A DNA stretch of 64,000 nucleotides from Ophelia neglecta (Eukaryota). Every line of letters starts with the position of its first letter. Within the stretch, counting starts at the first letter, position 1. Position numbers and translations under genes: made by a program. Where the stretch lies: NCBI GenBank assembly GCA_965285935.1, contig OZ260661.1, forward strand, positions 61,876,001-61,940,000. The letters run 5' to 3'. Under the pieces are notes generated by a model, which saw only the letters and a program-made list of their open reading frames with translations, was not told the DNA's origin and searched no databases. This document shows, in pieces, positions 1 to 37,143 of the stretch.

Positions 1-432
1 TTCACAAACTATAGACCCTACACAATAAATTGATAAAAAAAAGGAAAAGGACTTCGTAATATGTGATAATACTTGTCCCTTTCTTTGGTTGATTTCTAAA
101 ACTTCCTACTACCACTTTGTCATGTACTTAGACCATGTTTTTTTCACCTTTGCCGGTTGTGTAAACAAATTCCTCCTTTCCTTCCGCCTTAACGATGATA
201 ATTCAAATGACAGTTTCATAATAAATAAGAGGAACACCGCTAATGTACAGAATGAGATGTATGATTCATTTGGTTTCAGTCCAATTGTGATAATCGTTAG
301 TCCCTAAATTCACAATGAATTAATGAATGAATCTTTTATCACCAAGTTAGTATAATTTACAATCGTATATCATTATTACATTCAAAACACAAATATACAA
401 TATACAATAGCATTTTGTAAATAATAATAAAT

Positions 433-12817: not shown

Positions 12818-14440
12818 TTATTTCCCTTTTTTTAAATTCCTCTGCAATGAAGACTGCACATCCCTGAGACCTTTGTCCTGTCTGGTCCTGCAACAAAAAT
12901 ACAGAAAAATTTAACACGTACATTCTAAGATGGTAGAAGATTCTACTAAACTTGCCTGATATAATGCTTGTTGGGTTTACTGTCGAGCTAGACAGTAGAT
13001 TAACTGGGGAAAATGTGGAGATACATTTCATTGATTTATGATTTATGTCAATCAAATTTACATTATAATCTCAATATAATCGATGGCCCATTGATCAGTC
13101 CTAGCTCCTCCATGTTCAGGCTGCCACCACCTAAACTGGATACCATATGTCCTGGCAGCGGGAGGAATCTCATAAGCCACACGCTTAGGCAGCAAGAATT
13201 CACTAGGTTCATGGGTGGCTATTAAGTTCCAATCTATCCCCTAGAGGAAATGGTGATGTTACATATTAAAGTCAAAAAACATACTTCCATCATTTATATG
13301 TTAGTATCATAACAGCACAAATGTTGAGCTGCATTGTCAGAATGAAACATAAAAGGATTGGGTTTAAAAGTATTATATTGTGCTTTGACATGTAAGTACA
13401 TTTACTTAGGTCCTGAATTCATGACAAACCTTATTTTTGGTATACTCTAAGACAACTACAGCTCTCCCAGACCCAGCTTTCAGATTTACATTACATGTGG
13501 GAACCTGTCGGTTGCTCCCTATCTGCAGCACAAACATCACCTTGCTGAAATGGTGGAAAGAAAAATGATTACCTGGGTTCCATATCGCTAAACAAAACAT
13601 CCAACAAAGTTATGAGTCACTTACCTTGCACGTGTGACGTCCATTTCGGTGGTAACTGCTTGACGAATACCACAGCCATTAAAGTAGAGGTTTTTACCAT
13701 GTGCCAGTGGGAGTAAAGAGCCACATCCCATACCAAGTCCACCTCCTTCAACAGTCTCCCACAGGCCAGTTGACACTCCACCTTCAAAGCCGTCTGTCAT
13801 GTGACTTGGTAATTCAGAACGAACAGGCTTACATGTGTCACCTGGGAAAAGCATGGATCCCATTATATCATAAACAGGATGACATTTGTAAAATGTTTTA
13901 AGCATCAATATACAGTATTAAAGCAACTTCTAAATGAAACATTTTGTCATGACATTTACCTAAATAGCCTGGGTCGCATTCACAAAGCCCATTAACACAG
14001 TCACCTCTTCCATTACACAGTCCAGGGCATTCTTCACCAATATATATGTCATCAATGGCCCAGCCAGGTCCCTCATTGAGAGCTGTATCATCCTGGAACC
14101 AACGAAATCGGGTCTGTCTGAAAATGCAAGATTAGGTAAATGATGTAATAAAGTGTTTGATAGTTTGAAACATTCCCCAAAGTCATGCATCAAATCCACA
14201 TTGAATAAAATAAACAGCACACAAAACTTGGGAATGATCTTGTATTGGAATTTCAACCTTCTTTTTTAAGTTTTCAATTAATGCAAAAAGAATGCAAAAA
14301 GAATGCATAAATAAGCTATGGCCAACCTTATTCTAAAATCAAATTTGGTTTCTATGTCCGATACATTTCTTCTATATCATGCACAGTATTTAAAATTTAA
14401 ATGTCGATAATGTTTTATTTCAATGTAGTATTTCAACTGA

Positions 14441-14485
<45 letters not shown>

Positions 14486-17400
14486 GTAGCTAAATAGCAA
14501 TTAATGGGTGAGAATGAAAAAGGAAAGTTTTAACCTGCTATCTGACTTTATACTGACCATCTAAACAAAAAAGAGTTATAATAATAAAGAAATATAAGAG
14601 GGTAAATCATAGCCTGTATTAAATACTAACACATTCTAAAATTCAATACACCAAAAACAACTGTATTAACTGAATTAGTAAAACAAACGGGCTGAAAACT
14701 CAAGACCAGTGAATATTGCTTCAACACACATGCGTGAGTGAAAATTCCCATGACATGATATTGTTGGTCACTACTTAGGTTTTTTCGGTTTCACTTTCTG
14801 GAAAACAACAGTGAAGTTAATTATACAGCTCAGAGCTGTGTAAGAAAAAGTGAGAACACAGTTTTTTAGGAAGGAAGCAGTTAGTTTAATGCTCCAACTG
14901 GTTTACCCTGAATAGACTTTAGGTGGTAGTAGTAGAGTTGCCCTGCGCCACTCCCTGTGGGTGCTGGCTGTGTAGATCGACCCCTGCTGATACTTGTAGG
15001 GCCTGCACTCCATGTTGTTTTCATGATCATTGATCAGACACTGAGGGTGTATGACATGCCAATCCTCAGAACTGGGATCTTTATTGAACTGCAGTAAGAT
15101 GGCATGTCTGGTATCACAGGCATACTTAGTGTCACCACAACCAACGGTTATCTAAAAAGAGAAAATATATTAATGATACTTAAAGGACCTTTCCTATGAT
15201 CAAGATATACATAAAACAGGGAAAAAATATCAGTAATATCAAGAGTAACATTTAGAACATTTTACTAGCCTTAAACTGTATCATATAATGCTCTTGTACG
15301 ATCATCTGCCTTGTTGTGACCATTTTCATTCCGGAATCATCTTTCCATGCTAACACATGGTCTTGCTTTCCACACATGTTGGTTTCTAGGTGGCCACTGG
15401 GATAGAACTCAATATCATCCATCTCTTCTTCAAAAGTCTCTAGGACATCACTAGGGTTGATCTCAGCACCCCCAATATACACATCATCGAGGCTCCAGGA
15501 GTGTGGCATGTCTGACAGGGGATAGGAGCCCTCTTCCCAGCCCGGGGGAAGTGGCTGCCACCATCGTACACGGGTACTGTTGGTGCGAGCAGCAGCAGGC
15601 AGAGGAATATACTCATGAAGAGGCTCTGCCCAGTAGTTGTTGTGGTCCAACACATGTAGGTTTAACCAAGTAATACCTGAATTAAAACTACACAATTAAT
15701 AAAGAAAATAATTTAATAAAAAAAAATTACAATAAATTAAAAAAGAAAAATGCTTACCACCATCAGTAGAATATTGCAAAAAAACACTCTCATTTCTTGA
15801 GGCCGGTACCCCACATCCCTTTTGTTCAGATGGTCCTCCTATCATGGCATAATACTGGATAAATCTAAAAGAAAGGGTAAATTAAACACTATTTTCTATA
15901 AAAACAGGCAGAGGCAAATATATATCATTTTAACCAGTGTGTGGTAGCAATACCAGGTTGTACCTTTTGTACATTAAATCCATGTTAATAAGCTTCTTAG
16001 AGATTAATTCGGAGGTCACCTTAGAAGGTGTGATTTCCTGCATAGAAAGTACATGTATGTGGGTGTTATCTCACATCTGGCCTTAGAATACGTCTGGTTT
16101 GTCCCTAAAGGTGAAAGTTACTTCCAAGATAACCATCAGACAGAAAACTAAAAGTTGTTTGGCTCTAAGATCTGCCATTTAAAGCAAAACCAATACAAAA
16201 CATTTCCACTTTTGCATGGGAATGAGCCAAATACATATCACCCTTTTTTCTTCAAAAATGGTAGGTGGCATTTAAAAATATCCTAAAAACAAAAGTTGCT
16301 TCAATGCTTTACCTAGCATTTCGTAGATCTAAGTCAACAGTGACAGCTTGTCTCTGACCAGGACCATCAAAGTGTAGACCTGGGGCCTCCATCAATGCAG
16401 AACAGCCTAATCCAACACCACTTCCCTGAATCATGCTCCACCTCCTAGGATCTACAGTTTTGTTCTCAAATGTGTCTTTTAGATCAGTCTGAAAAAGAGA
16501 TCCTAGTACATTATGTGTTATTTAAGTACATGTATTGGTAAAAGATTCTTTGGGAGAAAGATTCTATTCTCTTGTATTTGGTGAAATATTTGATAATTGA
16601 ATCATTTAAGGCATGTTGTTGAGCTGGCACTCTTCATTTTGTCCTTTCCAAGGGAGATTTTCATTTCACAATATGACATTTGTTTGCCATTTCTTTATCA
16701 CTTGTAAAAGGTGGTATCAAATTATCAAGTCATTCAAACAAATAAAATCAAACCATTCTCACCATTGTGGATCTAACTTGGTAGCAGTTTTCACCACGAT
16801 ATCCGCGGTCACAAATGCAGACAGGGTGGTCGCAATGTCCGTGCCCCCCACAGAGATCAGCACAGGCTGGGCCAATATACACATCATCCAGAGCCCAACT
16901 CTGCCTTCCTGATGCTGATGGATCCTCAGGAAGCCACTGCACCCAGCGAAACCTGGTGCCACTGTTTTTCCATGGAAATATATGCTACAGCTTTTTTAAA
17001 AGTTATCACAGCAATAGCTGCTTTTAAGCAAATTGTATCAGAAATATTACACAAGAAAATTGACTAAAGTTTCAATGAAAAAAATATGTGCTCAGTACAA
17101 GAAATATGTTACAGGCTTTAGGCTTTACAAAAACATAGCACAGTAGCACAGGCCAATAAGTTGCTTACTTTGAAACCACAGTTCCATCTAATGGTATGGT
17201 AATCCTTCTCCATCCCACATTGGGATAATAAACACTGGGAATAGTGGCATTGTCATGACACATGGGTATAAATGGCAGACATTGATCTACCAAATGGTGC
17301 CAGTTCATTCCATAGTCATTAGAATACTGCAAATGGACTGGGGCTACATATTTATCACTGGAGCTATTGCATCCTACACTGATGCTGAACTGTAAGATAT

Positions 17401-20400
17401 ATCCTGGCTCAATAGTCAAATCTGAAGACATCAAAGTGACATTTTCATCTTCTTTAAGTTGTCCAGTTACAGTATAGCTAGACCCACAGTATCTTCCAAA
17501 TTTAACGTTATCCTGCTGCAGCCAGACATATCTCCTTTCACTGTCATTACCATGAAAGCCGTCTTTGACCTCAATTGGATTAATGTCATTGCCACCAATG
17601 ACAACATTGTCAACAGCCCAGTCACTCTTAGCTGGGCCTCCATGTTTAGGTTGCCACCATCTAACCCTCACACCATTCTTCTTAGCATCTTTAGGTAAGC
17701 CAAGGCTCACGGAACTGAAAGAATTGATAAAGTTATGCAGTAACTGTTCTAGTAACTTGAACCATGATAGGCATCAACTACGGACAAAGCTTGAACATGT
17801 GTTATCACCTTGGCCTCCTATAGTGCACATAATACAACTCTTTCAACAAATTCCAAGTTTTGCCACCATTAGTTGAGTAGTCAACAATCACTCCTTCATC
17901 TCTGTGAGTTGGAGGAGAAAGGCAGCCGAACTTGATAACAAACTGGATGAATACAGCCTGTCTAAGGTCCAAATCTATGGTAATCAGCTGACGAATACAC
18001 CCCTACAAATGGGGAGCCAATGTTAGACAATACATACACTGTTTGGGTGAATCTCAAAGCACTATTAAATAATAATAATACTAAGAATATAATTTATTCA
18101 AGAAATAAAAAGTAAAAAAAGCTATCATATTGTATTGATTCAGAGGCAGATGATAAATATATATATTTATAAACTGCTAATGTATAGTAACAGATATCGC
18201 CCACAGACAATCCTTACGCCTTTGAAGTGAATTGAGGGACCTGAAGCCAGAACGCCACATTCGGTAGAGATGGATCCCCCATTGATGCTGATCCAGTCCT
18301 GTTTAGTTGGTACTTGTGTAAATGAGTCTGTAAGCAACGTCTGAAGTGTGGAATCGGGTTCCGAGCAGGAATCTCCACTCCAATGCTTGTCACAACTATA
18401 CAACACACACACAAAACATTTATATAATATTTGATATTCTTGACACAACAATTTAAACATAAATGTACAAGTATGCATACATTAGAACACTTTTCATACA
18501 AGAATGTTTCCAATCAGGCTGCATCTAAAGCTAGAATATTTACATTCTTACATGCACATTCCTTGGTCACATCTGCCATGTCCAGCACAAGAACATTTAC
18601 ACTCGTCTCCAATGTAGACATCTTTAATGGCCCATGTGTTTTCAGAATAGAACCCTGGTCGCTGGATCCACCGAAACCGAGTGGCCTTGGACCTAAGTAA
18701 CAGTAGTGTAATTACAATTGCATGTATTTCTTGTTAAAAGTCATCTTATTTGTAAACTTTGTGAAGGGAATACAGCAAATATACAGGGATGAGAATGGGA
18801 AACTTTGAAAAAGCCAGGGGTGTGCTGGGGGGGTTTCAAAGGGGGGCAAAAAACTCGGAAAACCGCGAATCCACCTTGTGTAGTAGGGAAGTTCCACAGT
18901 GATCCTGTTCCAACCATGATAGACATCTGAGGTGTACTGACTCTTTCTATGGAACTGTGAACATTCAACATCAGAAGGCAGACATTCGTCCCATACCAGG
19001 TTCCAAGTCTTTCCCAAATCCAAGGCATATTGGAGCTCAATGGCTTTAAAATAGACATCAGCAGATCATTAAGACACTATACCTCAAAGGAATTACAATG
19101 AGCAATTTGAACCTCCCTTTGTTTTTATAATAGCAACATAACAAATTGCCCACCATAACATCTTCCCGATGGCTCACATCCCATAGCAAGGGTGAACTGC
19201 AGGTAAGTGGCTTCTGTAACCGAGACATCATTGCTCACCACATATCTTACTGGATCATCACCTATAGTCATGAAATGATTCCTGATAAATCATTAGTCAT
19301 AATGTGTTTATTTGTAGAACACAACAATTCTACCAAAAGTCAAGTAAAACAACATGTAAAAACTACAGACTGCAATTAACCTGCAAAATTGAGTGATTTG
19401 GTTTCGACACCACAAGCTGGTTGAATCATGGCACCAGGATAGAGCAGCCAGTTATCTAGGCTCGGGTCACTTAAATTGTCTTGCAGCACCATACGACCAT
19501 TGATATTTCCACCAATGTATATCTATTCAAGAAATTCGAAGACATTCACAGACAAAGAAAACTTCTCAAACTAGCTATGATCCGATATACATTGTTAGGC
19601 AAAGTGTTAGGTGTATTTTGCTCATAAAGCCAGTAGTACAACACCTGATCAACAGCCCAGGTATCCAGGAAGGTGCCATTTTCTGTTGGCTGCCACCATC
19701 GAATTCTGGTAGCATTAGTTTGCACTTCGTATGGCACTGGCATGGCCACATAGAAGGCTCGTCCATAATCTGGTACAGCAAAGTCAAACTGTTGGAGGGT
19801 GTGCCACAGAATGCCCCCATTGGTGGAATACTGGAGCATCACTGGGGATGTGTGGTTATTTGGGCCCCTCACACCACAACCCAGTTTGATGAAAAACTGA
19901 ATCACACTGTGATAAAATAGAAACACTTTACACTGAGTGCCTTTCCTATATTTAAAGTAATTCTTAATTGTACTAAACAACAATTTTATTTGATATCTAA
20001 TAGAAAAGAATTCATTATTGCTGACCTAGCAAGATTGAGATCCAAGTCTTGTGTGATGAGAGCTCTCACTCCGGTGTTTGTGAACACCAGGCCATTATCA
20101 CTGACTAGTGTGCCACACTCCTGATTTTTCACTCCACCACTGTTTAACCACCATTTGCTTTCATTCAAAGGCTTCATATCACTGTCATCAAAGCTCTCTT
20201 AAAACAATTCAATGAAAGTTGGAGGACTTTATTTAAATGGGAGAGGAAGAAAGTACAAAAACAAGAAAAGGGTTTAAATTATCCATTTATGATATACCCG
20301 GTAAGCATAATGAACGAAATATCAATAAGTGATATGGTACTTGGAACAAGTACCCTGTTTTATAAAGCATAGTTTCTTGAAATAAGAGTTCAGCTGAACA

Positions 20401-23400
20401 CAAATATGACCTGTTAATCACTATATACAGTACCTAAGAGGAAGTTTGGATTTTTCCTGTTAGCCACACACAATTCCCTATCATAGCCAGTGTCACACTG
20501 ACAAAACATGCCATTGATGCAGGTGCCATGTCCATTGCAGTGAGCCTCACACTGCATACCGACTAGGACATTATCTATAGCCCACTCCACGGCCAGCTCC
20601 TTCTGACTGGGGTAAAAACCTTGATACCATCGAAACCTTACATCTCTGGAATACACATACAATGTTTTTCATAGTTGAAATTTCTGGAATTAACAGCTAT
20701 GTATAGTGTGTAAGTAGTACAGAGTTATGCCATAACTTTTCTTTTACAAATTACCCCCAGCATGATACAGTGAGAACTCACAAGGACTGGTTTTTTTTAC
20801 ATAGGCCTACAAAAGATATGTAGAACAAGTTATTTATGCTCTCATGAATTGAATGACAAGTGTAACATTGATTTCACCAGGAATTTCCATGCACTCACAA
20901 GTTAATCAGTACATATTGACGAGACTTACCCACAAAGCTGGAGCTCACTGAGTGGTACTACTACCCTCCTCCAGTATTCTGTTGTACCTTGGTAGTAGAT
21001 GGTGGAGTCTATCCTACGGTCAGCACAGTTAGGGAGAGAATCCTTAGTACATGGTGGTACCACCAACTGCCAAGACTTTCCCTGATTATAGGAATATTCT
21101 AGTCTAACTGGATTTATGTGAGAAGGCTGGGGTGTGCATCCTATGTTGATCTGCAAAGAACAATTCATTCACATGTAGCCTGAGTAACTAGTTTGATTGT
21201 TCCAATAATATTATTTTGAGATGGTCTAGTGCCAGCAAGACGGATTTACTAATGATATTTCCAACGATTGTACATTGCATGTTATTTTAAAACTATTGGT
21301 TTAAACATATTTATTTGGATTGACCGTATAGCGCCAAGCTAATCTCTCCTTAATTTTAGTACACCTATTGTACATTGCATACATCAAATTGTATGATGGA
21401 CATATCTGAGATGGCCAAATCTCTGGTGGACACTGATCTCTCTCCTGGCCCTGAACTGAACACCAAGGAAGGGGTCCCTGTTAACAATTCACCATTCCTG
21501 CAATGGGGCAAGCTTTTTACTCTAACAGAAACATTATTATGATTTTTATGTTGTTGGCATTTACTGTCAGGCCAATAAAGTATTAGGTTCTATCTTTTGG
21601 ACCAAGGATGAAATTTATGATGAATTTTATTACAATTTATTTGATTTCTTTTGTATTTCTTTCCTTTGCTTTTAACTAATACTGTGCAATGGCCGATTAC
21701 AATTTTCAGATGGAGGTAAAAACCATTTAAGTCCACTTTTGATACTTATCTACTTCAATGTACCAGTACCACCATGAAATGCCAAATATTGTGAAAATAC
21801 CCAAAGAAGTAAACTATGGAACTTGGACATCATGTCTCACAAGTTTGGAGTATTTTTTGCAGGAGCAACAGTATAAACAAATCAAGAAATTTGTATTTTT
21901 TATAGCAGGTTTTGCAGGGGCTTACCTAGTACTAAATGAGCAATATTCAGCAGTCGTGCCTCCAGGCCAGAACAGCCAGTCGTCTGGGTGTGGACCGGAA
22001 TTAAACGTCTCCTGCAGCATGTCTGGGTTCATCAGATCTCCACCAATGTAAAAGTTATCAATACTCCACACTGACTTCATCAGACCTGTTTTTTCAAGAA
22101 ACAATTAGAAAAAATTACAAAACTGAAATGCAGTCCATAAAAAAATTCAATCTAACTGCATATTAAATGCATTTCTATATAGTAATATCATTTACAAGGC
22201 ATGGCTTATAAAGATAATAGATTTAAATAAGGGAAGGTTCACCTCCATGCTTGGGCTGCCAAAACCGGAATCTAGTTGAATTGATCTGAGCTTGGCTAGG
22301 CAAAGGGTGAGTAAAATATCTGAAAAATAATTCCATAAAGATGTTGCACGAATAAAAAATGATTATTTTTAATTCATCCTGATTTAACTCTGCTCATTAC
22401 GACAATGAACTTTAATGTGAGCAAGCTGTCAAAGAATTTCTTAAGGTGAGTAAGTAGATGATGAGACAACCTTGGTGTGCCATCACTTTCATAATGGATT
22501 TCATCCAGAAGATGCCAGAGTATGCCTCCATTGACAGAATACTGAAGGAGTACCATATGCTCTGATGGCCAGGTTGAGGTATCACGTACGGTGTTGCAGC
22601 CATACTGAAAGGTGAACTGCAGGAACAGCGACATGGAGACATCCATATCTCTTGTCACGGCCATGCGAAGGTTATCCTGCCAGAAAAAAATAAAAAGGTG
22701 AAATTGAAATCATATCCTAGGATTGTTTAATCACTAAGCTACACTTTCTCATGGTAATACATTTGGTATAGAGTAAAACATGCCTTATAGAAGGTTAGAG
22801 CCTTGCCCGTAACCAACAGTCCACATATGTTAGAAGGCTCTCCGCCATGCATTACAGGCCAATCGTTGGGTGTTATACCCATATCAAAGTCATCTCTGAG
22901 GGTGGTGGGAAGCTGGATGGCTGGCACACAATACTCCCCAGCATAACCTGGGTCACACCTGCAATGCAACAGCCATGTTATAATCCTATAACTACTCATA
23001 CCTTGGTAAATGGAATTCGGATACTGAGACCAAAGCACTATCCTATGTGCATAATCTATAATCTATCGGATAAAAACAGATAATATTTATTTATTTGTAG
23101 TATATGCATCTTACATGCATACTCCATGACTGCAGTGACCATGTCCCGAGCACATCCACGGACATCCATCACCAAGATAGATGTTATCAAGGGCCCAGAC
23201 ATTCCCTCTTAGAGACACTGTCTGCTGCAGCCAGCGGAAACGAGTGGCTGGGGAGCTACAGTTTAAAAAGTAACAGGTTAAAGTATTACATGTACACTAT
23301 CTATTATCTAATAATGGGATAACAGAAAACAGAAAAATTTAAATGCAAGCTTTTGTTTCACATATCTGCAAAACTATAACTTGGCACAAGCATGTGTATT

Positions 23401-26400
23401 GCATATGTTTGTCTATGGTGAAACACAATATATAAAGGTCAACTGTGGGTGTGGTGCACTCTCGCCAGAAAATACTTGTGGCTGTTTAATGGTTGCATGA
23501 TAGAAATAAGCATCTTTAGGATGTGAAAATAAAATTACACAGCATTAGAAGGAAGATAAAGTGTGACTCTAGTCCAGTTGGCATGACTGTCAGACATAAA
23601 GTTGCTGCTGACATGGTAGCCGGAGCAGTCTGATTGGGGTGGTAAACACTCCTCGGCCACCGGGTGCCAAGTACGTCCCATGTCCACCGAGAACTCCAGC
23701 ATCACCCCATACAGGGTGGAGTAGGTCCCACTACAGCCCATGGATATGTCAAATTGTAGGAAAGAAGAGGGGGTCACTTCATAATCCCATGTTTCAGCAT
23801 AGCGCATATTCCCTAAAATGAATCATAATATGTGTGCCAATTATGACAGCAGTTTACTTAACTGGTTAAACTTTACCAAAAATAAAACAATATTGGGATG
23901 TATTTAACTGGGGGGGGGGGGACTGTGGCCTGTTTTGACAGGGTGTGCCTCTGGGTTTTGGAAACCAGACCCATTCATGTAAATCGCCTAGCAAGATATA
24001 CCATACAAGTAAATATGAGGCAAAAAGAGGAGCCATTAAAGTTCAAATGGGCATGCAGCACTACCCCGTATAATTTAGAAACAAAATATGCATGAATCTG
24101 GTTCCAATTTTCTACTTAATTTTGTATTTCTTCTTTAATGACATCATGCTTTGGGGGAGAAAATATTTTGTCATTCTTGTAAAATAATCTTGAAAGCACA
24201 TCCATTCATTTAAGAAAGGTCAAAATTGTCCCCTATACATGTAAATTCATGCTCAAAGAACTCACCAATGTAAGGGGGACATGCTGTATGCCTAATTGCC
24301 TATACATGATAGTACCCCTCCCCCAAAGTAAATTAATAAAGTGTTCAATAGCACAGATCCCATTTTCTTCATACTCACCATTTTTACTGAACTCTAGAGC
24401 ATTATCCCTTGAATGACATGTGATCTTGGGCACAGCGTTCATGGCCATAAACCAGATGTCTTTTTTCATTGGATTGAAGTTTTCTTGGAAACCATTGTAG
24501 CTGGTATCATTGCCAGCTATAATAACATCATCCAGGGCCCATTCAGCTCTCGGTTTGTCTGTATATGAATATAATTAACCAATATCAATTGAAGACAAAA
24601 ATGATGAAGTAGGGAACAGGAACTGGGGCTAGCAGTGTATGTTCCCTTCACAGTAAATAAATAGCCATTTATGAACCAATCATACTATGCACCTGGTTTG
24701 CCAAGTGGTTGCCACCATCTGAACACTGTTGAGGCTGATTTAGCCTCAGGTGGAATTTCTATAGTAACAGAATGTGGGTCATCTTCTAAACTCTTTGGAT
24801 CTAGAGTTTTCAGCATATGCCAGGTGACTCCATTGTCTTTGGAGTAATCCACTACCACTCCTTCATTTCTATTGACAGGTCTACGGCAGCCTTTCAGGTC
24901 TTTTCTGCTACCAATCTTGATGTGAAACTGTAGAACTCTGAAGGGACAAAACATTTTCACTTTTACTAGGTGAATAATCTGAAATAGAACCTTTTCTTAC
25001 TCAGAACTTGAATTGGCGAAACAAAAACAATATAAAAAGCCTCTTGCCTGATGCTCTTCACATCCAGGGGGACAGTTCTGGCTTCCCTAGTGCCTTCCCC
25101 ATCAAAGTAAATAGAGTTTCCATTACTTATAACTCCACAGCCATTTCCCAGTTTGCCTCCCAGCGCATGCTCCCACAACTCTCCAGGTCTGTTGGAATTC
25201 TCAAATCTCTCGACCATGCCGTATGGTTGGTCAGCAAGTGGCTCACAGTTGTCTCCTGTTAGAGCAGATAGACATTGGATGCTTTTGTACCTCCTTCAAG
25301 AGTTAGGTTATTGCTTAGTTACAAAATGGTGCCTTATACCCAGGAGATCAACTCAATGTGGTGAGTAGTAAATTGGTTGTCAAAGCTTTCAACAATTCTG
25401 TACAGGTTTAATTTCATTTATGCTGTGTGGGATCATCAAACTCCCCTTGTAGAAACTACAATTTAAACAAATAATTTGTCTTTTTTCCATGACAATTTCC
25501 AGATACTTTAAGGCAACATGTTGCATTGGGACATATATATTCATAGTTTCATTTAAATGGTTTCATTGTTGCAAGTATTGTATAATGAAAAATGTGGTAT
25601 CAGTAAGGACTTATAATTGTTAAAGCCTTAAGACTCTGCCTACCACCATATCCTCGTTGACAATGACACATGGAGCCATCCCTGCAGACTCCATGGCCGC
25701 TGCATACATCAGGGCAGGGAGATCCAATGTACACATCATCCAAGGCAAAACTAGAGTCTGACCCTCCAGACTGCCACCATCGAAAGTTAACCTTTCTGTA
25801 ATTAATATCATGTTTGCAATTGGTTCAAATTACCATGATTACTGTGCTCTGATTATATGACTTGCCTTGAGCACTTGGAAGGTCCAAATAATATACAAGA
25901 TAAACTTGATAAAGGTCTCAATACTACCCAGTAGTTTTGGTTTTCCAAGTCCTCCAAGAAAGATTCGAAGCACTTCTATTTTTTTGGTTTATGAATTACA
26001 ACTTTACTAATTACAGTGTTCCCTGCGATGAAGGGCAACTCTGATGAAGGGCCACCTGCGGTGAAGGGCCCCCTTTCCTTGGATTTAGGGGTGGCCCTAC
26101 ATCGCAGGGACCACTGTACCATCTTTATTGTTATTATTTTTGTTACTTAATTCTGTTATGAATCTTTTTCAAAAATATTGCATGAAAAGCTTGAAATAGC
26201 TATAAACAAGCTAGTACATGGCATAATATGATATAAATTAAATATCATTGCAAAACAATTTAGACTCTTCTTGCAGCTAGCAATAATGCCTTATAATTCA
26301 CCTCCAAATGTTGGGAGGTGGTATTTAACTTACCCAGAGAGCAGTTGAGGGGATACAGGTATCAACACCAGTCTCCACTCCCCATATGTACCTGCATGGT

Positions 26401-29400
26401 AGATACTGCCCTCATTGTATTTGTCTGGACACTGATGATCCAGATAACATGATTCTTCTACTAGGTTCCAGGACATTCCTGCATCTTTACTAAATTGGAA
26501 CAGGACTGGGTAATCAAATGAAAAGCTCTTGCTGCATCCAACATTGATCTAAAAGAAAGAAAATGTTCTAATCAGTTTAAAAGTAGTGATATGCACAACC
26601 GATCATATTTCAGTACCAGTGAGATCAATAAATATATCATTGACAAGATCAAACATAGAAAGTTGTTTAAAACACTAAAATAGCTAGTTTTTGTCTGTTC
26701 ATAATGTTTTCCTACCCTGAATTGTATGATGTCTCCTTTCTTAAGAATCATGTCAGTAGTTTGTGCAAACTTGTCATTATTTTGATTGGCAAACATGAGT
26801 GCGTCATTCTGAGACCCACAATAAGGAGCGTACATAGCCTCAGTTATAGTCAGCCACCGGTGCTGGCTGGCTTCATCCGCTGGCTCATCTAAAAGCTGAA
26901 GTGATAAATGGTTAATATCCAAAATAGAAAGGTTTAAAGTTACATCACATTTTACCAAACAATCTATACAAGCAACTGTACATAAGAATAAGGTAATATT
27001 GATGACAAAAAAAAGCTTAAAGGGTTTCAGACAATATTTCTACATTCATGATTTATAAACTGGTAAGTGCAATCACCTCAAAATTGTCTTCTATTTTGGG
27101 CATGTTATCATATTTCCCCAATATAACTTGGTCAATAGACCACTGGTCTGTATTTTGTCCGGAGTGTGTAGGTTGCCACCAACGGAACCTTGTCAGTTGA
27201 GTCTGTGATTCTTCAGGTAGGTTAATGTGTGCCAAACTGACAAAACACAACTTCATCAATGTGGAAATGGTAATAAGAGCTTATGGAAATAACTATTATC
27301 AAAAAAATAATATGTATTAACAGTGTAGCTAGCATGTGACAACATGGAAATTTTTCTGAATCAACTGTCTAGCATAGGAACAAACCTGGGCTTTCTGAAA
27401 TCATTCCCTTGCAATTCTTTCAGTAACTTCCAAGAAATACCACCATCAGTGCTGTACTGGACCAGAACATTTTCCTGTCTCCGGTCAATACCGAAGCATT
27501 GAATATCATTGATACCACCCAATTGGGCATAGAAACTGAGAAATTGGGCTTTAGTTGTGTTCAAATCCTTGCTCATGAGTACTCTGGGGCCATCCTGGAA
27601 GAAAACACAATGCATTGTTAGTTAGTTGTACATCACATGACTGAATATTAGGAACACGATAAAAATAGATATTCTGTACTACCATGTTGAAAAGTATTTT
27701 GTACCTTAAAGAAGAAGAGGGACTCCCCTGATAGAATGGTGCCACAGCCCTGGTTGGCCCCGGCTGGTTCCCCACCATATAGAGACTGCCAGTCTTTCTC
27801 AAGCTGAGATATTAAAGAGAAGTCATTCTTCATGCCATCTGGAAGGGTGATGTTTGGTTCGCACGATGGACCTGCAAAGTTGGTGTCACATCTGGAATCA
27901 AAGTGTGACCTTATATTAGCAGAATACAACATTTGCATAAACATTTTTGTGGGGGTAAAAAGTCATACAAATTCCGTCTTTTACTACTATTCAATGCACC
28001 ATGATGTCATAATGCCCAAAAGAGTTCGTGACACTATTGTTCATTTGTCCCAGTGTGTAATGTTATTATGATACACAGTTAAAAAAACACTTGCAATCAA
28101 TGTAATAGAGAGAAAAAAATTGAATAAGAATTTTTCAGATTAATCAGTGAGAGATGATAACATACATGCATGCTCCTTGCTGGCACTTGCCATGTCCATG
28201 ACACATATTGGGACACTGCTGACCCACATACAGACTACCAATTGCCCAGCTATCACTGCCGGTCCATCGTGACTGCCGGAAACGAAGCCTAGTTATACTG
28301 GACCTATACAAATAAAGCAGAATACATACAGAGCATGATGATAGGTTTAGCATTGACCTTTGTATGGCAAGGCCAGTATCCTAATCAGTTACATACTTTA
28401 CAAGGACTGAAAGAATTAAATTTTCTTACCATGTTGGAGAAGGTAATATGATAGTGACTCTTTTCCACTGAAGGAACTGGGATGCATGGAATATAGTGGG
28501 CATATGGTAGTTTTCACACATGCGGGGAGGCCAGCAACCCCTTCTGACCAGGTCCCATGTCATCCCATGATCTACAGAGTACTCCAGATATACACTATTG
28601 TCCAGATCTGGCAAGAAATGGAAGCTGCAGCCCATTACCAATTCAAACTGAAGAATGTACGAGGGACCTATCAGCATTGAACTCGTCATCAGATATCTGT
28701 ACTCCCCTTCCTGATAGGGATCTGTGAAACTAAATTAAAACATTAAAATAAAAATGAAGCTGATTCAACTCTTTCGGCAAACAATTGGTGTTAACAGGTA
28801 CTGAGGAATTAATTGTTATTCCATTAAAACTGTTTTAAAACTGTTGTAAAACTGTGTAGTTCCAAATACCTCATTGGATGCATTCTGCCACAGTACATCT
28901 CAATACTGCCCAAATGGACATCCAGTGAGTGTGAAGCTTCCTCTGGGTCAGAGAAATCCTCCAATATAGTGTTATACATCTCACTAGTAACTGACACATC
29001 ATCTATGGCCCATACATCCTGCCCAGGTCCTGAGTGGAAAGGTTGGTTCCAGCGGAAACGGCAAAGGTTCTTCTGTGCTGAAGGAGGCAAGTGGATGGAA
29101 ACCACCCTGAAATACAGATAAAAACAAGAGAAAGTACAAAACATGATCAACTGAGCCCGATATTCTGACTAGAAAAGGTCAAAGAAAAAAAAGAATGACC
29201 TACATTGGATCACTAAATTCTTCAGGAGTAAGTGTCTTCATCAAAGACCAGGAGATTCCTCCGTTACAAGAGTACTGTAGGAATATTGAGTTTTCTGGCT
29301 GATCAGGAGGTGGGCATCCCCCTACAGCTGACTCACTGCCAACTCTGATACTAAACTGCAAATACCTATGAGAAATAAAGAAAATGAGTAATATAAAGTG

Positions 29401-32400
29401 AAGATGGGTCAATTCTTGGAACCATTGATAACATGGAGAGCTCCTCAATCATGCAATCTTGCCATGACACAAGGCTTCCTGATAGAGCTGTAATGGGGGC
29501 ATGTAAGTCATATCATAAAACAGTGACACATTTTGTAATATATTGAAACATTAAGTCCAGTCTCGGTACATTGCATGAAGGATCCAGACATACATGATAG
29601 GCATTTTACCATTGGCCCAAATAAAATCTGCCACTGCATCCTTAGGTTACAGAAACATATCATTTGCATATAGGTGGGCTAAAGCAGCTAAAGACTGCTG
29701 ATTACACCATTAAACTAAATAATAAACCATTCCTTTTTTTCAAAATTGTTTAAACATAATAGTCCAATTCTGAATGGGCATTTGTTTGTATCCAGAAAGG
29801 ATGAATCAAATTGTGTTCCAACTTGTATTAAGCTGACTTGCATGCCTTATATTAAATGTTACCTACATGCTCTTTACAGTCTGATGTTATAATACAGGGG
29901 GGAAGGTGGGGAAGGACAAGTGGATGGGGATGGGGGAGAGTAGGGAAAGGGAGGAGGGGAGGGAAAGAGTAGGGGAAGGGAGGAGAGGAGGGGCCATTAT
30001 GGAGAGTGATTGCTTGTTTCCATTACTTAATTTGCCAGGGGATAAAAATTGCAGATAAAAAGAAGCACAAGATCACCTTGCATTTGTTGTGTTCAGATCT
30101 CTGGTTTCCAGCTGTCGTAAGCCTCCTAGATTAAACACAGCTGCCTTGCCGCTGCTAACCAACCCACAACTATAGCCGAGATTGGCCCCTTTAACAATGT
30201 CAAAGTTTGAATGTATTGTGTCGGGATCAGTCATAAGGTCTATGAGATGGTCGTACACTGGCCCGGTGGCTGTATCACATTGGAAACCTTCATATCCAAA
30301 GTCACACCTAGGATTAGAATTACCAGGGAAGAGCAGGAACTACTAGTGTTTTAATATGTAAAGTAACAAGCTGTGTTTTCAACATATATTGCAAATTCAA
30401 AATTCCTCTCTTCAGACTATGTATGATGATCTTGTCTGCAAAATGTATGGCATTAGTGCTAAACACTATTATAATACTGACTTACTGACATCCATTTTCA
30501 GTGCATTTTCCATGGCCCATGCATCCATTTGGGCAATGACCAATGAAAACTGAAATCAGAATTCATAATGTAAATCAAAATCAGGTAAAAAATACATTTA
30601 TATAAATGGGGTACAAGTGTGAACAAATCGTTTCAAATGCATTTCAAAGTGGCTTTATACAAATGGTGTACAATTATTGTGAATATGATGCATTTAAAAG
30701 TGGGCACTGCTCTCCCTCACCTGAATCTAGTGCCCATTTACTCTTTCCATCATTCAATTGCCTCCACCTAAATCTGCTATATTTGGTAAGAGCAACTTTT
30801 GGCACGGGTAGTGTATATCTTGTCCAGCTGTAAATGCAGATTTACATCTTTGTTGTCTCGTTCAGGCAAAGATTTAAAAGAAACACTTCATGTCATTTAT
30901 CTGTTGAAATGGGACTGGCCATGTATATATAAAGTGAATTTAGTTACAGTTGAAATATCCTACCCGTCTTGTGAATCACCAGAATAAGTTGAAGTCTGGA
31001 CAGACTGGGTTCCATTACAAGTTCCCTCAATACATTGCTCATACATAGGAAACCAATGTTTGCCATGGTCGGTTGAAAATTCCAATACCGCACTGAAAGA
31101 GCAGGGTAAAATGTAACATGTGTTAAATATAAGCATAAAAAAATACATTTTAAAGCAACTGATAAATGGTTGTTTATAATTTTACACTCTGACTCCACCT
31201 GCTGTTGTTTCCATTTGGGCCATATTTCATGTTGAGACTGAATTGGAGAAAATGCTGAGGGTCTTCAGGAAGCAAAGGTAATATGGAAACCATGTCCACG
31301 GCCCAGGCGTCTAGAGCCTGACCACTGTGCTGCTTCTGATTCCAGCAGACTCTCTGTTTAGGCCCTCGTCCCTTTAGGGGAATTGGTACCGACACAAGTG
31401 AGGACATCTAGAATGAAAGTCAAGATCATTTTACATTGTGACCATTAATATAGCTGTTATTTATGTTGTGATAATATTGTGTTGCAAAAAGATTTGGAAG
31501 AATCTGGATCACCCTGGAAATGGACCCTTCTTTTTATGAAATTTCAAAGTATCATGTGTTTCACCTCAGATACCAGAGTGGGCTCTAGGGAATGGAGTTT
31601 GTATATATATATATGCAGATACAAAATTGAGAATATTACATGAACATAGCTGGCCGGTGAAGCAGTTATAATTAGGGCAGTAGTACGTTGTCACAGAGCA
31701 GTCACATTTCAAATGTTGAAACCAAAGAAAACTGCTTTTATGAGACAGATAAATAGTTACTATGTAGGCCTACACCATTTTGTCTGTGTATTTGGTTGTT
31801 TCTTATTCGGATACTTTCCTCCACTGAGGACTTTTCCACAGGTCACTGCTAGCAGGGGCTAATCTACCGTGATGCACGGACGCACGTGCGTCATCCCTGG
31901 CCTGTATTTAAATGCCCTATTTTCTGTGGAATTAACAATAACTTAACTTTTAGGGTGGGTGCATCCACCCTAAAAAATCCTGGATTAGCCCATGGCTAGT
32001 TATATATATATATATCCAGCAAGAAAATTTCTAGGTCCAAAACAAGGTTTTTTCTTTTCATTTTCAATGGTTGAACCATAACTTCTCCGTTACTGTTCTG
32101 GGACACAGCAAACGTTGAAAACAGACAGCTCCAGGTTGTGCAATTAGAGGTAGAGTAAGTGAAACAATACTGGGACCTAACAATTAAAAAACATGTTATC
32201 AACATGTGGTTCAAATGTAACATGGAATGCTCATGTTTCAGAACACTGAGTGATAATTGTACCTCATTGCCTTCGATGGCAAGATCTATCAACTGGATGC
32301 TGTATCCCTCTGCATCTTCTATATACAAGAAAACCTCTGATTTCCAATCGACCACAGTGGTGCAAGCTTTGTTACCTACAAGATAAAGACACGAGGAACT

Positions 32401-35400
32401 GATAATATAGAAATATATTTGGAAGGCTCAGATAGTGTTATTATGTCAAATTGACATTGGGGAATACACCGCTTAGTTAATGTAATTCACTGCATATGTA
32501 CCAAATGTGAAGAAGAACTGCAGGGCCCCAGCATCTTCCAGGTTGACGAGTGGTGTACACAGTCGTCTTCTTTTAGAGCCTCCGGACATCACAGCGTAGT
32601 CACCCAAGTCCATAGTACCACAGTCATGGCCAATATGACCTCCTTCAAAAACCCACCTTTCAGTAAAAAAATAGAAGATTACTTACCATTTATCATAACG
32701 TGCTTGTCAGAATTTGAAAAAAAAAAGTCTTAGTTCTAGTGGTGACAGTCTCAACTATATATAGTAATATCAATAATACATTATCTTACAATTTCTGAGG
32801 CTAGGCTCAGATAGAATCATGACAACAGAAATGTTATTTTTCATAGTGTCCTCTGTACCTCCTGTACCTACCAGTTATATCACAGGCACACACAAACTCT
32901 CGGGCGCATTATATATACAATTATAACAATGTAATACAATGATATGACTTTAAATCCTGGTAATTAAGTTTCTTTGGGTAGTTCTGTTTTACAAACAAAA
33001 TTCTACAATGGCATGACTATTTGCTAATTATATGCTAGAAGAGAAAAGAGGAAAGCACTTCAAAATCTACATTCATGCAGTGGATATATAATTGGGCAGA
33101 AACACAATTAAATAAAAGAGAATCGTGATATCATATTGGATATAAAAATGACTTACTCCTTGATATCACTGGCATCATTCATTTCATTATATAGAATGCT
33201 GCTTGCTTTTTCAAATGTCTTGAGGTTCATGTCCCGGCTGGTAACAAAGTTATATTCAGCATCTTCACTTTCAAACACCAAAGCATGGTTGTCTGAGTGG
33301 CATTTATGCTGTAAAGACATTTTACCTTGTTTACTTCAATGACCCACAGTAGTAGCTCACAGTTAAATTGAGATTTTGGATTTACATGTTTTAAATTTCA
33401 TCTGTTCACAGTGAAAATGGAAATGAGTATTGACATATTTGAACCAACAGCACACAATTAAAACATGCTGTGAACAAAATTGATGTTAGAAAATGGCACA
33501 AATTCAATGAAAAAGATTTACCCTAATATTTGCTCCAGGCAGAAACAGCCAGTTGGCTGGGTCAATGGGGTCGAAGTCTTCTTGCAGCATGGTGCTGGGT
33601 TCTGCCAGGTTGGTGATGACAACGTTGTCTACCGCCCAGCAGCCTGTGTATTTGGGACTCAAGGTGTTTGTTCTCTCCTCCCAGCGAAGACAGACCCCGT
33701 CACGTCGAGCACCTACAGGCAGGTGGACCAAGTGGATGGTCATCTGCTCTCTTGTTGGAGACCTAACCAGAAATTTCATTCGTATATCTAATTTTCAGGT
33801 ACACACATGTATGTAAAGGAAATAGTACAGGCTCTTTACATCTGTTATTGAGGTTTTCACTGTTGCACATTAAGTGCATGCTTCCTACTTGTTTCTCATG
33901 CACAAGTACTGAAAATCTAGAGCGAATTGGTCAAGAAGAGGGGCCTGTATACAAAATCAAACTGATGGCCACAGCACAACAAGACTAAGAAAATTGGGAA
34001 TGTACTCAACATAATCTTTACAAATTTTTACTAGAAATATGAGTTACCAAAGAACGAATGAAGACAAAAAATGCTGGGTCTCTTTTAAGACAGTGCACAT
34101 TATGCAGGAATATGGCTATTATTAAAAGATAACAAAAGATCATTACATGATAGTGGTGACATCAGTGAAGTTAACACAGCCATCTTTTCCATATGAGAAT
34201 ATAATCTGTTCTCCATCCTTCGCCGGTTCACAGCTACCTGAAGCTAATATATATATATATATAACAATCCATGAAATGTATGCAGTTTAATCTGCTGCAA
34301 AAGAAATAATTATATACTTATAATTATACCTGGAAAATTTAATTTTATTGAGTAACAATCCACTAGTTGCGATGAGATGATGAAAGGCGCCAATCTCATA
34401 TTTTGACCACAGAAACTTGTTTTATGTCTTACCTATGGCAAACTGAACTACTGAGGCTGAAGTCAGGTTAAAAGGATGTGTGATGAGGTGCCGGTCTCCG
34501 GTGGCATTACAGGCTACTGCTGATTTGCCATGTAGTACAGTCCCACAGCTAATACCCAGTTCAAATCCTCTGTGGTTGTTCCTGGATAATATCAAAAATG
34601 TCTAGGACTTGATTACAGAATTATTTAAACTCAACATACAATTTATAAATATATGGCATCCTTTCAACAGTAATATGTGAGTTCTTGGGTAGAACTCAAC
34701 AGAAGGATCATTTTCACAGATGACATTATGGCCCACTAGTTTGAGGATCAGTACCAGCATGTAAATATATGACCCAATGCACCACGTCTCTTGAAAGATG
34801 CTGCCAAACATATGTAGCATGTTGTTGACAAGTTATGACACAGGACATTCTATGGCTCCATAAACCGGCCTTAAAACAGCAACTTGCTCAAATAGAATTG
34901 CCAAATTCATATTGCATGAATAAGTAATGGTTTGTGTAATTGCCTTCTCTGGTTACTGGATAACAAGTTAATAAATTTAAGTGATGATGGTAACCAGACA
35001 GCAACAGTAAATAATAGACTTTAAGAATAGTCCTGGAATATCGGCACTGCATGTTAAAGGGTCATAGTAAGTTACATGTATATTATTATGTCACATGACA
35101 ATTTTCTATGTCATGGGACATTATCAATTACAGTAAAACCTGTCCGCAAGGACACCTGACAATTAGGGACACACTTACTATTAAGGACATTGTTTTTAGT
35201 ACAGCTGTAATACTTTACATGTAAAGTAACCTGAGAAGTAAGGACAACTGAGAAAAGAGGACAGATTTCCCAGTCCCTTGGCTGTCCCTAATTGTCAACT
35301 TTCACTGTACATCAGTTCAAAACATTTTAAATGTATATTGATACCATTTACCAAATTTGGGGGCTGAAGTCTGACCCAGAATCAAAGTCCTCTCTTAAAA

Positions 35401-37143
35401 TAACTCCATCAGAATAAGTTGTGGTCAGTGTTGGCCTGGGGGGCACTGCACCTGATCCTATTATTCAACTTGCATATAAAACATCTTATATGAAGCGGTA
35501 CTTTGTATAATCATAAGAAGTGCTAGGATTAATTATCATACACTCATCAGTGGGAAACTGTGCAAACTCATCAAAAAGTAATTATGTGCAGAGTACAGAT
35601 TTATAAAAGATAATTTATTACAAGAGTAAGGTAATAAATGTTGTGAAATATTTTCAAATTTAAGTTAGTATATTTATCTGAAAATAAATGTAGAAGGTTG
35701 CAATACTTACCACCTTCTTCACACAGCTGCATAACAGTGGTGTCTTTGAATAATATTTGAGGTCCAAGTGTTGCAGTTGCTCTATAAAGATATATGATCA
35801 TAGACAAGTGATACCAGATCCACACAAAGAATCATGATCCAAGCCCTACAAAGGCTTTTGGAACTTTGGCTATTTAAAAAGAAAACTGAATTTGAGAAAA
35901 GATGGACCACAATTATATAATGATATTTACTTGTTTTGTTCTAAGCAGCATCTCTTAGTCAGGCCATTAAAGGATAAAATCATTATGTAAAACCAGGACA
36001 TTAACTTGGGACAAGAGTAAAACTTGAAAATAAGTTAATTTCAATCAGTTGTGATCAGTTTACTTAAAGCTTATTAAAATACTAAGAGATAGTCTAGTAT
36101 AGCTTACACAAAACTGACACATCCTGTGCCCTGGGCAGGAGCCTTCCATGTAAATGATAGTTGATGTTTCGGGCGGTGGCTGATATGGGAATGAACATGG
36201 GAGCACATAAAATTTTGTCCAAAAGGTTTTCCAGAGTTGATGGCCAGGCCGGGTAAACTGTTCATAGGAAACCGAGAAAAGTCGCTTGGTATTGTATAAA
36301 GGCCGGTGAGAAGAAAACCATCAAAATCCCTACTAGAGGTTATTGAAACTGAAAGAAAGAGGTATGTGTACCATTCCATTTATTATGTAAACTTATTTAA
36401 TGTAAATTTTTCTTTTTTCATGTGAGACTGCAACATTTTTGTGAATTGAATTATGAAATTATCCGAAACAAAAAAACAATACAAAAACTGCTAATGTTAC
36501 AGTAAATTTCAAGCATGTCTGGTAGGATGAAAATAACTAACAATTTTCATCAAAATAACAATTTCTTACATTGTAATCAAGCTAATATGTTAATATGACA
36601 AATGAAAATTGATAAATAGGTTAAGATCTACGGTAAGAAAAAGCAGGGAGGGAATTCCCAAGAATTCGTGTTTATGAACACAATAAGTACACATTAAATA
36701 CAATGTTATATAAAACACAGACCCTGGGGAAAAAAATCCATTAACTGTCAGATAGTCAATATCCAACTCACCTTCATATAATTCTGAGGGAATGTAATAT
36801 TCTGGATTGTCTTTGATGCTTACACTGATAGCCACTTCACCAGTGTTCAAAGTTGAGAGATCAGACTCAGTATGGTAATTACACATGAAGAAGAATGGAG
36901 ACATGAGGTGGTGTTGAGCTACCCCAAATCCCAGTAATAACAGAAAAATGAGACATTTGGAAAGTTCTTCTTTCATCATTACCACTGATATGGCATCTAA
37001 AATGAATTCATGCAGAAATATCAAACTTTATGAAAGAGATGGATTACTATGATTCAAAAGCTTTGAAGAAATAATGGGTTTTTTAATGAATAATTACTAC
37101 CCAGAAGGCTCTCCTGCTATTCAAACAACTTACCTGATAGCAT
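12818..37143 (-). CDS. RELN: Reelin, full length: signal peptide, reeler/F-spondin-like domain, H region, 8 reelin repeats (A-EGF-B), short basic C-terminus; ~57 coding exons
   Basis: N-terminus ...[28 protein letters not shown]...[18 protein letters not shown]...[11 protein letters not shown] matches Reelin. Repeated YSxxGGxxW Asp-box, TRFRWWQP and WAIDxVYIG motifs. Eight EGF modules at ~30500, 28200, 25690, 23140, 20510, 18580, 16830 and 14000. Last exon 12887-12818 ends ...NLKKGK*. First ATG at 37143 has an upstream in-frame stop; an alternative ATG lies at ~36979. Confidence 0.97.
14447..14480. repeat. (TA)n microsatellite
   Basis: About 17 consecutive AT units in a Reelin intron. Confidence 0.95.
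26014..26116. mobile_element. pogo/Tigger-like MITE (103 bp)
   Basis: TIRs CAGTGTTCCCTGCGATGAAGGGC / GCCCTACATCGCAGGGACCACTG, flanked by TA on both sides. Internal repeats of GATGAAGGGC. Confidence 0.85.
29897..29993 (+). repeat. Purine/G-rich low-complexity tract (G-quadruplex-capable)
   Basis: Multiple GGG-GGGGG runs with repeated GAGTAGGGAAAGGGAGG in a Reelin intron. Confidence 0.7.
35131..35307. mobile_element. pogo/Tigger-like MITE
   Basis: TA-CAGTAAAACCTG...ACTTTCACTG-TA termini, with internal GGACA/TGTCC subterminal repeats. Confidence 0.75.

What the first reader, a model, noticed from the sequence alone, without database searches (positions are those of the whole stretch)
18551..19522. 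Reelin repeat 6 lacks both lipoprotein-receptor-binding lysines (K2360 to Asp, K2467 to Ser)
Seen: repeat 6A reads [21 protein letters not shown] (Asp codon 19257-19259) and [18 protein letters not shown] (Ser codon 18644-18646). Known: mouse Reelin binds ApoER2/VLDLR LA modules through K2360 and K2467; recalled vertebrate context is [21 protein letters not shown] and RFRWHQPAPFD-K-QQTWAI, which aligns without gaps. Inference: a complete 8-repeat Reelin here probably does not use the canonical two-lysine ApoER2/VLDLR-Dab1 mode, and one site is even charge-reversed. That points to a different receptor or an ancestral matrix role.
Basis: partly seen in the sequence, partly recalled or inferred. 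Interest (0 to 1): 0.8.

Follow-up and report, generated by a model that had tools for sequence, protein, structure and literature searches.

The report
Invertebrate Reelin lacks receptor-binding lysines
This invertebrate (probably annelid) genome has one intact eight-repeat Reelin gene that lacks both lysines vertebrate Reelin uses to dock onto its lipoprotein receptors, and so did every non-vertebrate Reelin I could collect, so the docking site looks like a vertebrate invention.

Summary
Four GT/AG-bounded minus-strand exons (19522-18552) encode Reelin repeat 6 subrepeat A. They align without gaps to the mouse R5-6 crystal chain. Asp (codon 19259-19257) falls on K2360 and Ser (18646-18644) on K2467. 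The gene is single-copy and looks complete.

The absence is not special to this animal. In a survey of fetched Reelins, 84 of 84 jawed-vertebrate cluster representatives have K/K. None of 29 non-vertebrate orthologues has both lysines (tunicates, amphioxus, hemichordates, echinoderms, chelicerates, an annelid, molluscs, a nemertean). Lamprey shows K/W, from a low-quality model.

The best reading is that this is the ordinary non-vertebrate state and that the lysine pair was gained on the vertebrate stem. K2467A and even K2467R abolish binding in mouse, so the vertebrate docking mode cannot operate at this site.

The same genome still carries a VLDLR/LDLR-type receptor with canonical Trp/Asp LA pockets and an FDNPVY tail. 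It also has a Dab orthologue, and the Reelin keeps the Cys2101-equivalent dimer cysteine. Binding through another site is therefore not excluded.

There is no RNA evidence. No structure or complex model of the spliced domain could be run. The scan had no earlier Reelin note in this genome.

The parts
13061..36907 (-). Reelin gene: reeler domain, eight Reelin repeats, about 45 coding exons. It is the only Reelin locus in the genome.
   Evidence: Collinear tblastn chains cover residues 1-3441 of Lottia, 68-3380 of Owenia (50% identity) and 33-3384 of Tachypleus Reelin. Pfam finds Reeler on 36349-36107 and Reelin_subrepeat-B on several exons. All 19 PF21471 hits in the 762-Mb genome lie at window 13067-29370. 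Eight RFRW...EGF exon motifs are present.
19381..19522 (-). R6A exon 1 (IYIGGN...SLNFA plus the first base of a Gly codon)
   Evidence: Matches PDB 3A7Q chain 367-410, E 3e-13.
19154..19261 (-). R6A exon 2 ((G)DDPVRYVVS...GRCY)
   Evidence: Matches PDB chain 418-449.
19257..19259 (-). Asp codon (GAT) at the column of mouse Lys2360
   Evidence: Both flanking gap-free alignments place it on chain position 415, which is 2360 minus 1945. MAFFT column check.
18875..19043 (-). R6A exon 3 ((A)[13 protein letters not shown]...PYYT)
18552..18692 (-). R6A exon 4 and start of the EGF module ((R)[22 protein letters not shown]...CDQGMC)
   Evidence: Matches PDB 3A7Q chain 507-553, E 5e-25, no gaps.
18644..18646 (-). 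Ser codon (TCT) at the column of mouse Lys2467
   Evidence: Query residue 16 aligns to chain Lys522, which is 2467 minus 1945. MAFFT column check.
20932..20934 (-). Cys codon (TGT) in ...LQLCG|DVRFRW of R5A, at the column of the mouse dimer-forming Cys2101
   Evidence: The motif CG.VRFRW lies 259 residues before the K2360 column in Zootoca and Callorhinchus, the same as 2360 minus 2101. Window sequence and splice junction.
23207..23209 (-). Arg codon in R4A (...SLRGNVW) at the repeat-4 column that corresponds to K2467. It is the only basic residue at either column in any other repeat.
   Evidence: Self-tblastn of R6A against the window; coordinates.

Best explanation
The stretch encodes subrepeat A of Reelin repeat 6 in a single-copy, apparently intact Reelin orthologue of an invertebrate, probably an annelid.

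Shown: the two surface positions that carry Lys2360 and Lys2467 in vertebrates carry Asp and Ser here.

Shown by comparison: this is the ordinary non-vertebrate condition. No sampled tunicate, cephalochordate, hemichordate, echinoderm, chelicerate, annelid, mollusc or nemertean Reelin has both lysines. All sampled jawed vertebrates do.

Inferred: the lysine pair was gained on the vertebrate stem. That gain let Reelin plug into the generic lysine-binding pocket of LDLR-family LA modules, which already existed. In this animal the vertebrate-type R6A-LA contact cannot form, so Reelin here does not use the canonical docking mode. It still looks like a secreted protein that may form disulfide-linked dimers, because the Cys2101 column is kept. 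Its partner is unknown.
For: - Exon structure and open frame.
- Gap-free residue-by-residue match to the crystal chain of mouse R5-6, with Ser on Lys522 and Asp on position 415.
- Numbering checked on vertebrate sequences.
- R6A orthology: the best hit in every full-length Reelin is its R6A, well above R4A.
- Column survey: 84/84 gnathostome representatives K/K. Among non-vertebrates: Branchiostoma N/P; hemichordates and echinoderms N/P; tunicates D/S, D/P, N/S; chelicerates P/S; Owenia N/A; molluscs mixed. A further relative, L002, reads T/P.
- One Reelin locus only.
- No other repeat of this protein has Lys at either column.
- Mouse K2467A and K2467R both abolish binding and K2360A disrupts it: PMC7701066. 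Both lysines form salt bridges with the LA1 acidic cluster and Trp: PMC5452030, PMC4882317.
- Vertebrate R6A sits on a long, well-supported stem branch (0.59 changes per site, 99/99).
Against: - No binding data and no RNA evidence exist for this gene.
- LA modules accept many lysine-bearing surfaces, and the genome retains the receptor and the adaptor.
- The dimer cysteine needed for vertebrate signalling is conserved. That fits a receptor-clustering role.
- Some invertebrates have one basic residue at or next to the columns: Argonauta, Pinctada and one unnamed sequence (P0254) have K at the K2467 column, Lottia has K at the K2360 column, two bivalves have R, and chelicerates have K one residue earlier.
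- The lamprey model shows K/W, so the timing within vertebrates is unsure.
- The sample of non-vertebrates is 29 sequences, several from automatic gene models.
Confidence: 0.75

Rival explanations
1. This Reelin still signals through the LDLR-type receptor and Dab. It would dock an LA module with other basic residues: near the old site (Arg five residues before the Ser, Lys seven residues before the Asp or after the Ser), on another repeat (Arg in R4A at 23209-23207), or elsewhere.
For: - The receptor has at least six LA modules with W..CDG..DC.D.SDE pockets, one YWTD propeller and an NFDNPVY tail at G000:C5:57.04-57.052 Mb.
- A Dab PTB exon is present at C5:73.32 Mb.
- The Cys2101 column is conserved.
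- Fly LpR receptors respond to mammalian Reelin, so invertebrate receptors are competent (PMC9454125 and PMC12867693, as abstracted).
Against: - In mouse even Lys to Arg at 2467 abolishes binding (PMC7701066), so geometry is strict at this site.
- No repeat has Lys at either column.
- Receptor and Dab are present in animals that have no Reelin at all, such as Drosophila, so their presence says nothing about coupling.
- R6 is not better conserved than the other repeats (35% against 36-44% to Callorhinchus).
Confidence: 0.22
2. The lysines were present in the bilaterian ancestor and were lost secondarily in this lineage.
For: Single lysines occur sporadically in molluscs: Argonauta, Pinctada and one unnamed sequence (P0254) at the K2467 column, Lottia at the K2360 column.
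Against: Every non-vertebrate lineage sampled lacks the pair, including the two closest outgroups of vertebrates, tunicates and amphioxus. That would need many independent losses against one gain. Ambulacrarians and amphioxus share a conserved N/P state.
Confidence: 0.02
3. The replacement is an artefact of the gene model or of the alignment.
For: There is no transcript evidence. The Asp lies one codon after an exon junction.
Against: Splice sites are canonical and the frame is open. Two independent flanking alignments agree on the register. The introns are tiny and the alternative acceptor gives a stop. Annotated mRNA-based models of other invertebrates show the same gap-free register.
Confidence: 0.01

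Closest known systems
Vertebrate Reelin, central fragment R5-6 (mouse; PDB 2E26, and 3A7Q/5B4X with ApoER2)
   Same: Same gene family and the same repeat. R6A is about 46-50% identical, aligns without gaps, and has the same RFRW/EGF landmarks. The Cys2101 column is conserved. The overall layout of eight repeats plus a reeler domain is the same.
   Different: Lys2360 is Asp and Lys2467 is Ser, so the two salt-bridging residues of the LA1 interface are missing.
Predicted 'reelin-like' proteins of other invertebrates (Owenia fusiformis, Branchiostoma, Ptychodera, sea urchins, Tachypleus, Lottia, bivalves, Ciona)
   Same: Full-length eight-repeat orthologues, 44-50% identical over the gene. All lack the lysine pair.
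   Different: The residues at the two columns differ by lineage: N/P in deuterostome invertebrates, P/S in chelicerates, N/A in Owenia and D/S here. No sampled species is closer than about 50% identity over the whole gene.
Drosophila Drospondin / F-spondin (proposed functional stand-in for Reelin in flies, PMC12867693)
   Same: A secreted reeler-domain protein linked genetically to LpR receptors.
   Different: Drospondin has no Reelin repeats. The window gene is a true Reelin orthologue with all eight.

Membership tests
Reelin (orthologue) | N-terminal reeler domain | tested here: met
   PF02014 on window 36349-36107, 22.3 bits against a cut-off of 21. It is collinear with the N-termini of annotated Reelins.
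Reelin (orthologue) | Eight Reelin repeats, each subrepeat A - EGF - subrepeat B | tested here: met
   Eight RFRW...C..C.GHG.C exons. Nineteen PF21471 hits, all in this locus. Collinear chains cover more than 3000 residues of 3400-residue Reelins.
Reelin (orthologue) | Repeat-by-repeat orthology of the stretch with R6A | tested here: met
   The best hit in each full-length Reelin is R6A (185-228 bits); the next is R4A (120-145 bits).
Reelin (orthologue) | Expressed, correctly spliced transcript | not testable with these tools
   No RNA run holds the stretch.
Canonical ApoER2/VLDLR-binding Reelin (vertebrate mode) | Lys at the K2467 column, the core residue inserted in the LA1 acidic pocket | tested here: not met
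   Ser, codon 18646-18644, aligned to chain Lys522.
Canonical ApoER2/VLDLR-binding Reelin (vertebrate mode) | Lys at the K2360 column | tested here: not met
   Asp, codon 19259-19257.
Canonical ApoER2/VLDLR-binding Reelin (vertebrate mode) | Intermolecular disulfide cysteine (Cys2101) needed for signalling | tested here: met
   Cys at 20934-20932 in LQLCG|DVRFRW, the same column as in vertebrates.
Canonical ApoER2/VLDLR-binding Reelin (vertebrate mode) | Core LDLR-type receptor with LA modules and an NPxY tail, plus a Dab adaptor, in the same genome | tested here: met
   Receptor at C5:57.04-57.052 Mb. Its best single-propeller PDB matches are VLDLR, ApoER2 and LDLR, and it has an FDNPVY tail. 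The Dab PTB exon at C5:73322052 matches Dab2 and Dab1 at 3.5e-21 and 4.8e-18.
Canonical ApoER2/VLDLR-binding Reelin (vertebrate mode) | Measured Ca2+-dependent binding to the receptor | not testable with these tools
   Needs recombinant protein. The spliced domain could not be sent to the fold or complex tools.

The most novel reading that the evidence does not exclude
Reelin is an old bilaterian protein whose coupling to lipoprotein receptors and Dab is a vertebrate-stem invention. The coupling was made by gaining two surface lysines on R6A that fit a pre-existing, generic lysine pocket. Non-vertebrate Reelins, this one included, would then work through a different and still unknown partner. 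Cephalopod and pearl-oyster Reelins may have gained the core lysine independently.
Probability: 0.5. Interest if true: 0.65.

Novelty: new variant of a known kind. Interest (0 to 1): 0.45.

Why it matters
Reelin-ApoER2/VLDLR-Dab1 signalling is the textbook pathway for layering the vertebrate cortex. A 2025 review still states that Reelin is not found in invertebrates (PMC11808024). Full-length invertebrate Reelins exist and uniformly lack the docking lysines, while their genomes keep competent receptors and Dab. This turns the question 'when and how did Reelin become a lipoprotein-receptor ligand?' into a simple two-residue gain-of-binding experiment. It also points to an undiscovered ancestral Reelin function. 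For this window alone the result is modest, because it is a typical member of that non-vertebrate class.

Tried and rejected
- RNA support: no RNA run holds the stretch.
- Structure and complex prediction of the window's R6A were not run. The domain is split over four exons and a joined model has no reference. Exons were sent to the search tools one by one. They were joined only inside local scripts, from window coordinates, for alignment with fetched proteins.
- Complex prediction was not sent. The report does not claim binding, and a negative result would mean nothing.
- Yasui 2007 (PMC1891246) and Manoharan 2015 (PMC4687978) are not held. The mutational facts are cited second-hand from PMC7701066, PMC5452030 and PMC6403468.
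- The Pfam PID search of the genome gave Shc-like, Numb and other PTB genes but not Dab. I first took L005 for Dab from memory; the PDB search showed it is Numb. Dab was then found with a short degenerate pattern.
- L001, a 67%-identical relative, ends before R6A.
- The snake fragment P0026 and the partial models P0005, P0006 and P0008 do not give usable R6A columns.
- The R6A tree does not resolve the animal's phylum.
- Per-repeat identity shows no special conservation of R6.
- Literature searches found no paper that compares these columns in invertebrate Reelins.

Full report
**What is there.** The window carries a multi-exon gene on the minus strand from about 36.9 kb to 13.06 kb. It is collinear with annotated full-length Reelins over more than 3000 residues. 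The chains cover Owenia 68-3380 at 50% identity, Lottia 1-3441 and Tachypleus 33-3384. Pfam finds a Reeler domain on the exon at 36349-36107 and Reelin subrepeats on several exons. Eight RFRW...EGF exon motifs are present. All 19 Reelin-subrepeat hits in the 762-Mb genome fall inside this locus, so there is one Reelin gene and no paralogue. Earlier notes of the scan call this genome probably an annelid's. That fits Owenia being the closest full-length Reelin, but the R6A tree does not resolve the phylum.

**The observation.** Repeat 6 subrepeat A is encoded by four exons: 19522-19381, 19261-19154, 19043-18875 and 18692-18552.
- All four have AG/GT boundaries.
- Joined, they give an open 186-residue frame.
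- The introns are 119, 110 and 182 nt, so there is no space for alternative exons.
- The only upstream AG in the first intron leads to a TGA.

Each exon was searched by reference against solved structures.
- Exon 4 aligns without gaps to mouse Reelin R5-6 (3A7Q/2E26) chain residues 507-553. The Ser sits on chain Lys522.
- Exon 1 aligns to chain 367-410.
- Exon 2 aligns from chain 418.
- Both flanks therefore put the first Asp on chain position 415.
- 522 minus 415 is 107, the same as 2467 minus 2360.
- In mammal, bird, lizard and chimaera sequences the Lys of FIEK lies 48 residues after the R6A start and 107 before the Lys of PFDKQQTW.

**Joined model.** The joined four-exon model was never sent to a search, fold or complex tool. 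It was built only inside local scripts, from window coordinates, for alignment with fetched proteins. Structure and complex prediction of this domain were therefore left out.

**Is it special?** No. One exhaustive profile-free search with the neighbouring 181-residue exon and two region-restricted searches returned Reelins from many phyla. They were named by their sources. In each, the best match of the window's R6A is that protein's R6A.

| Group | K2360 column / K2467 column |
|---|---|
| Jawed vertebrates (84 of 84 cluster representatives) | K/K |
| Lamprey (a 'LOW QUALITY' model) | K/W |
| Tunicates | D/S, D/P, N/S |
| Amphioxus | N/P |
| Hemichordates and echinoderms | N/P |
| Chelicerates | P/S, with a Lys one residue before the K2467 column |
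| Owenia (annelid) | N/A |
| Argonauta (cephalopod) | E/K |
| Pinctada (bivalve) | D/K |
| Lottia (gastropod) | K/P |
| Tegillarca (bivalve) | P/R |
| Mya (bivalve) | E/R |
| Littorina (gastropod) | E/E |
| This window | D/S |

A further relative from an ENA assembly (L002) reads T/P. None of the 29 non-vertebrate orthologues has both lysines. At about 46% identity, losing two given residues is not remarkable by itself. The clean split between vertebrates and everything else is the real signal. In the R6A tree the vertebrates form a well-supported clade on a long stem.

**What it means.** In mouse, both lysines form salt bridges with the acidic cluster and Trp of ApoER2 LA1 (PMC5452030, PMC4882317). 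K2467A and even K2467R abolish binding, and K2360A disrupts it (PMC7701066, citing Yasui 2007/2010). With Ser and Asp at these columns, the vertebrate contact cannot form here. No other repeat of this protein has Lys at either equivalent column. Only R4A has an Arg at the second one. By parsimony the pair was gained on the vertebrate stem, after the split from tunicates.

**What remains open.** The same genome holds the other parts of the pathway.
- A core LDLR-type receptor lies at G000:C5:57.04-57.052 Mb. It has at least six LA modules carrying the W..CDG..DC.D.SDE lysine pocket, one YWTD propeller and an NFDNPVY tail. Among single-propeller structures its best matches are VLDLR, ApoER2 and LDLR.
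- A Dab PTB exon lies at C5:73.32 Mb. It matches Dab2 and Dab1 at 3.5e-21 and 4.8e-18.
- The Reelin keeps the cysteine at the Cys2101 column (LQLCG|DVRFRW, 20934-20932). In mouse this cysteine makes the signalling-competent dimer (PMC7701066).

These facts fit either a conserved dimeric scaffold with another partner or binding to the same receptor through another surface. Receptor and Dab also exist in flies, which have no Reelin (PMC9454125, PMC12867693). Their presence therefore does not argue for coupling. I put about 0.75 on 'no canonical docking; typical non-vertebrate state' and about 0.2 on 'still a lipoprotein-receptor ligand by another site'.

**Novelty.** Invertebrate 'reelin-like' models are in public databases. 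A 2025 review nevertheless states that Reelin is not found in invertebrates (PMC11808024), and the 2026 Drospondin paper says that Reelin was until recently considered to exist only in vertebrates (PMC12867693). Six full-text searches found no comparison of the receptor-binding lysines outside vertebrates. The class-level pattern seems unreported. The window's gene is an ordinary member of that class.

**Limits.**
- There is no RNA evidence.
- There are no binding data and no structural model of this domain.
- Several comparison sequences are automatic gene models.
- The key primary paper (Yasui 2007) was not held.

Noticed in passing
window 39871-47655 (-): A gene for an origin-recognition-complex subunit lies just upstream of Reelin on the same strand. 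The Pinctada imbricata model P0248 fuses the same two genes, so the neighbourhood is conserved between this animal and a bivalve (31-81% identity per exon).
   Followed up: partly
window 20932-20934 (-): The cysteine at the column of mouse Cys2101 (the intermolecular disulfide needed for signalling) is conserved in this Reelin, and also in Lytechinus (HVCGTVRFRW).
   Followed up: partly
window 23207-23209 (-): R4A has Arg (SLRGNVW) at the column equivalent to K2467. Ptychodera and Helobdella R4A also carry Arg there. This could be an alternative basic hot spot.
   Followed up: no
P0245 (Argonauta hians), P0248 (Pinctada), P0254, P0252 (Lottia): A few molluscs have one of the two lysines. Argonauta reads HAPFDKEQKW, with the first six residues after the His almost the same as the vertebrate APFDKQQTW. 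Pinctada and one unnamed sequence (P0254) have K at the K2467 column, and Lottia has K at the K2360 column. Possible independent gains.
   Followed up: no
P0265 (Lampetra fluviatilis, 'LOW QUALITY PROTEIN'): Lamprey Reelin has Lys at the K2360 column but Trp (PFDWQQSW) at the K2467 column. This is either a real intermediate state or a model or sequence error.
   Followed up: no
G000:C7:79278-1029972 and C7:7848180: About twenty near-identical PID/PTB-domain exon hits on one strand, spread over 1 Mb of contig 7 (for example ...FAYVARDRMTRIHMCHVFRCDTPARQIANTL...). This looks like a large tandem gene array.
   Followed up: no
L004 = G000:C2:1843891-1847265 (-): A single open frame of 547 residues with a complete PTB domain, followed by a long Thr/Asn-rich low-complexity tail. 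Apparently intronless.
   Followed up: no
L005 = G000:C1:63803732-63806890: A Numb orthologue exon (44 of 54 residues nearly identical to Drosophila Numb PTB, E 1e-25). It lies on the same chromosome, 1.9 Mb from Reelin.
   Followed up: partly
L002 (ENA ERZ25069853 ctg33102l) 566-3275: A related invertebrate assembly carries Reelin R6A exons with the same exon layout. The last R6A exon is 61% identical to the window's. The columns read T and P, with Arg just before the second.
   Followed up: partly
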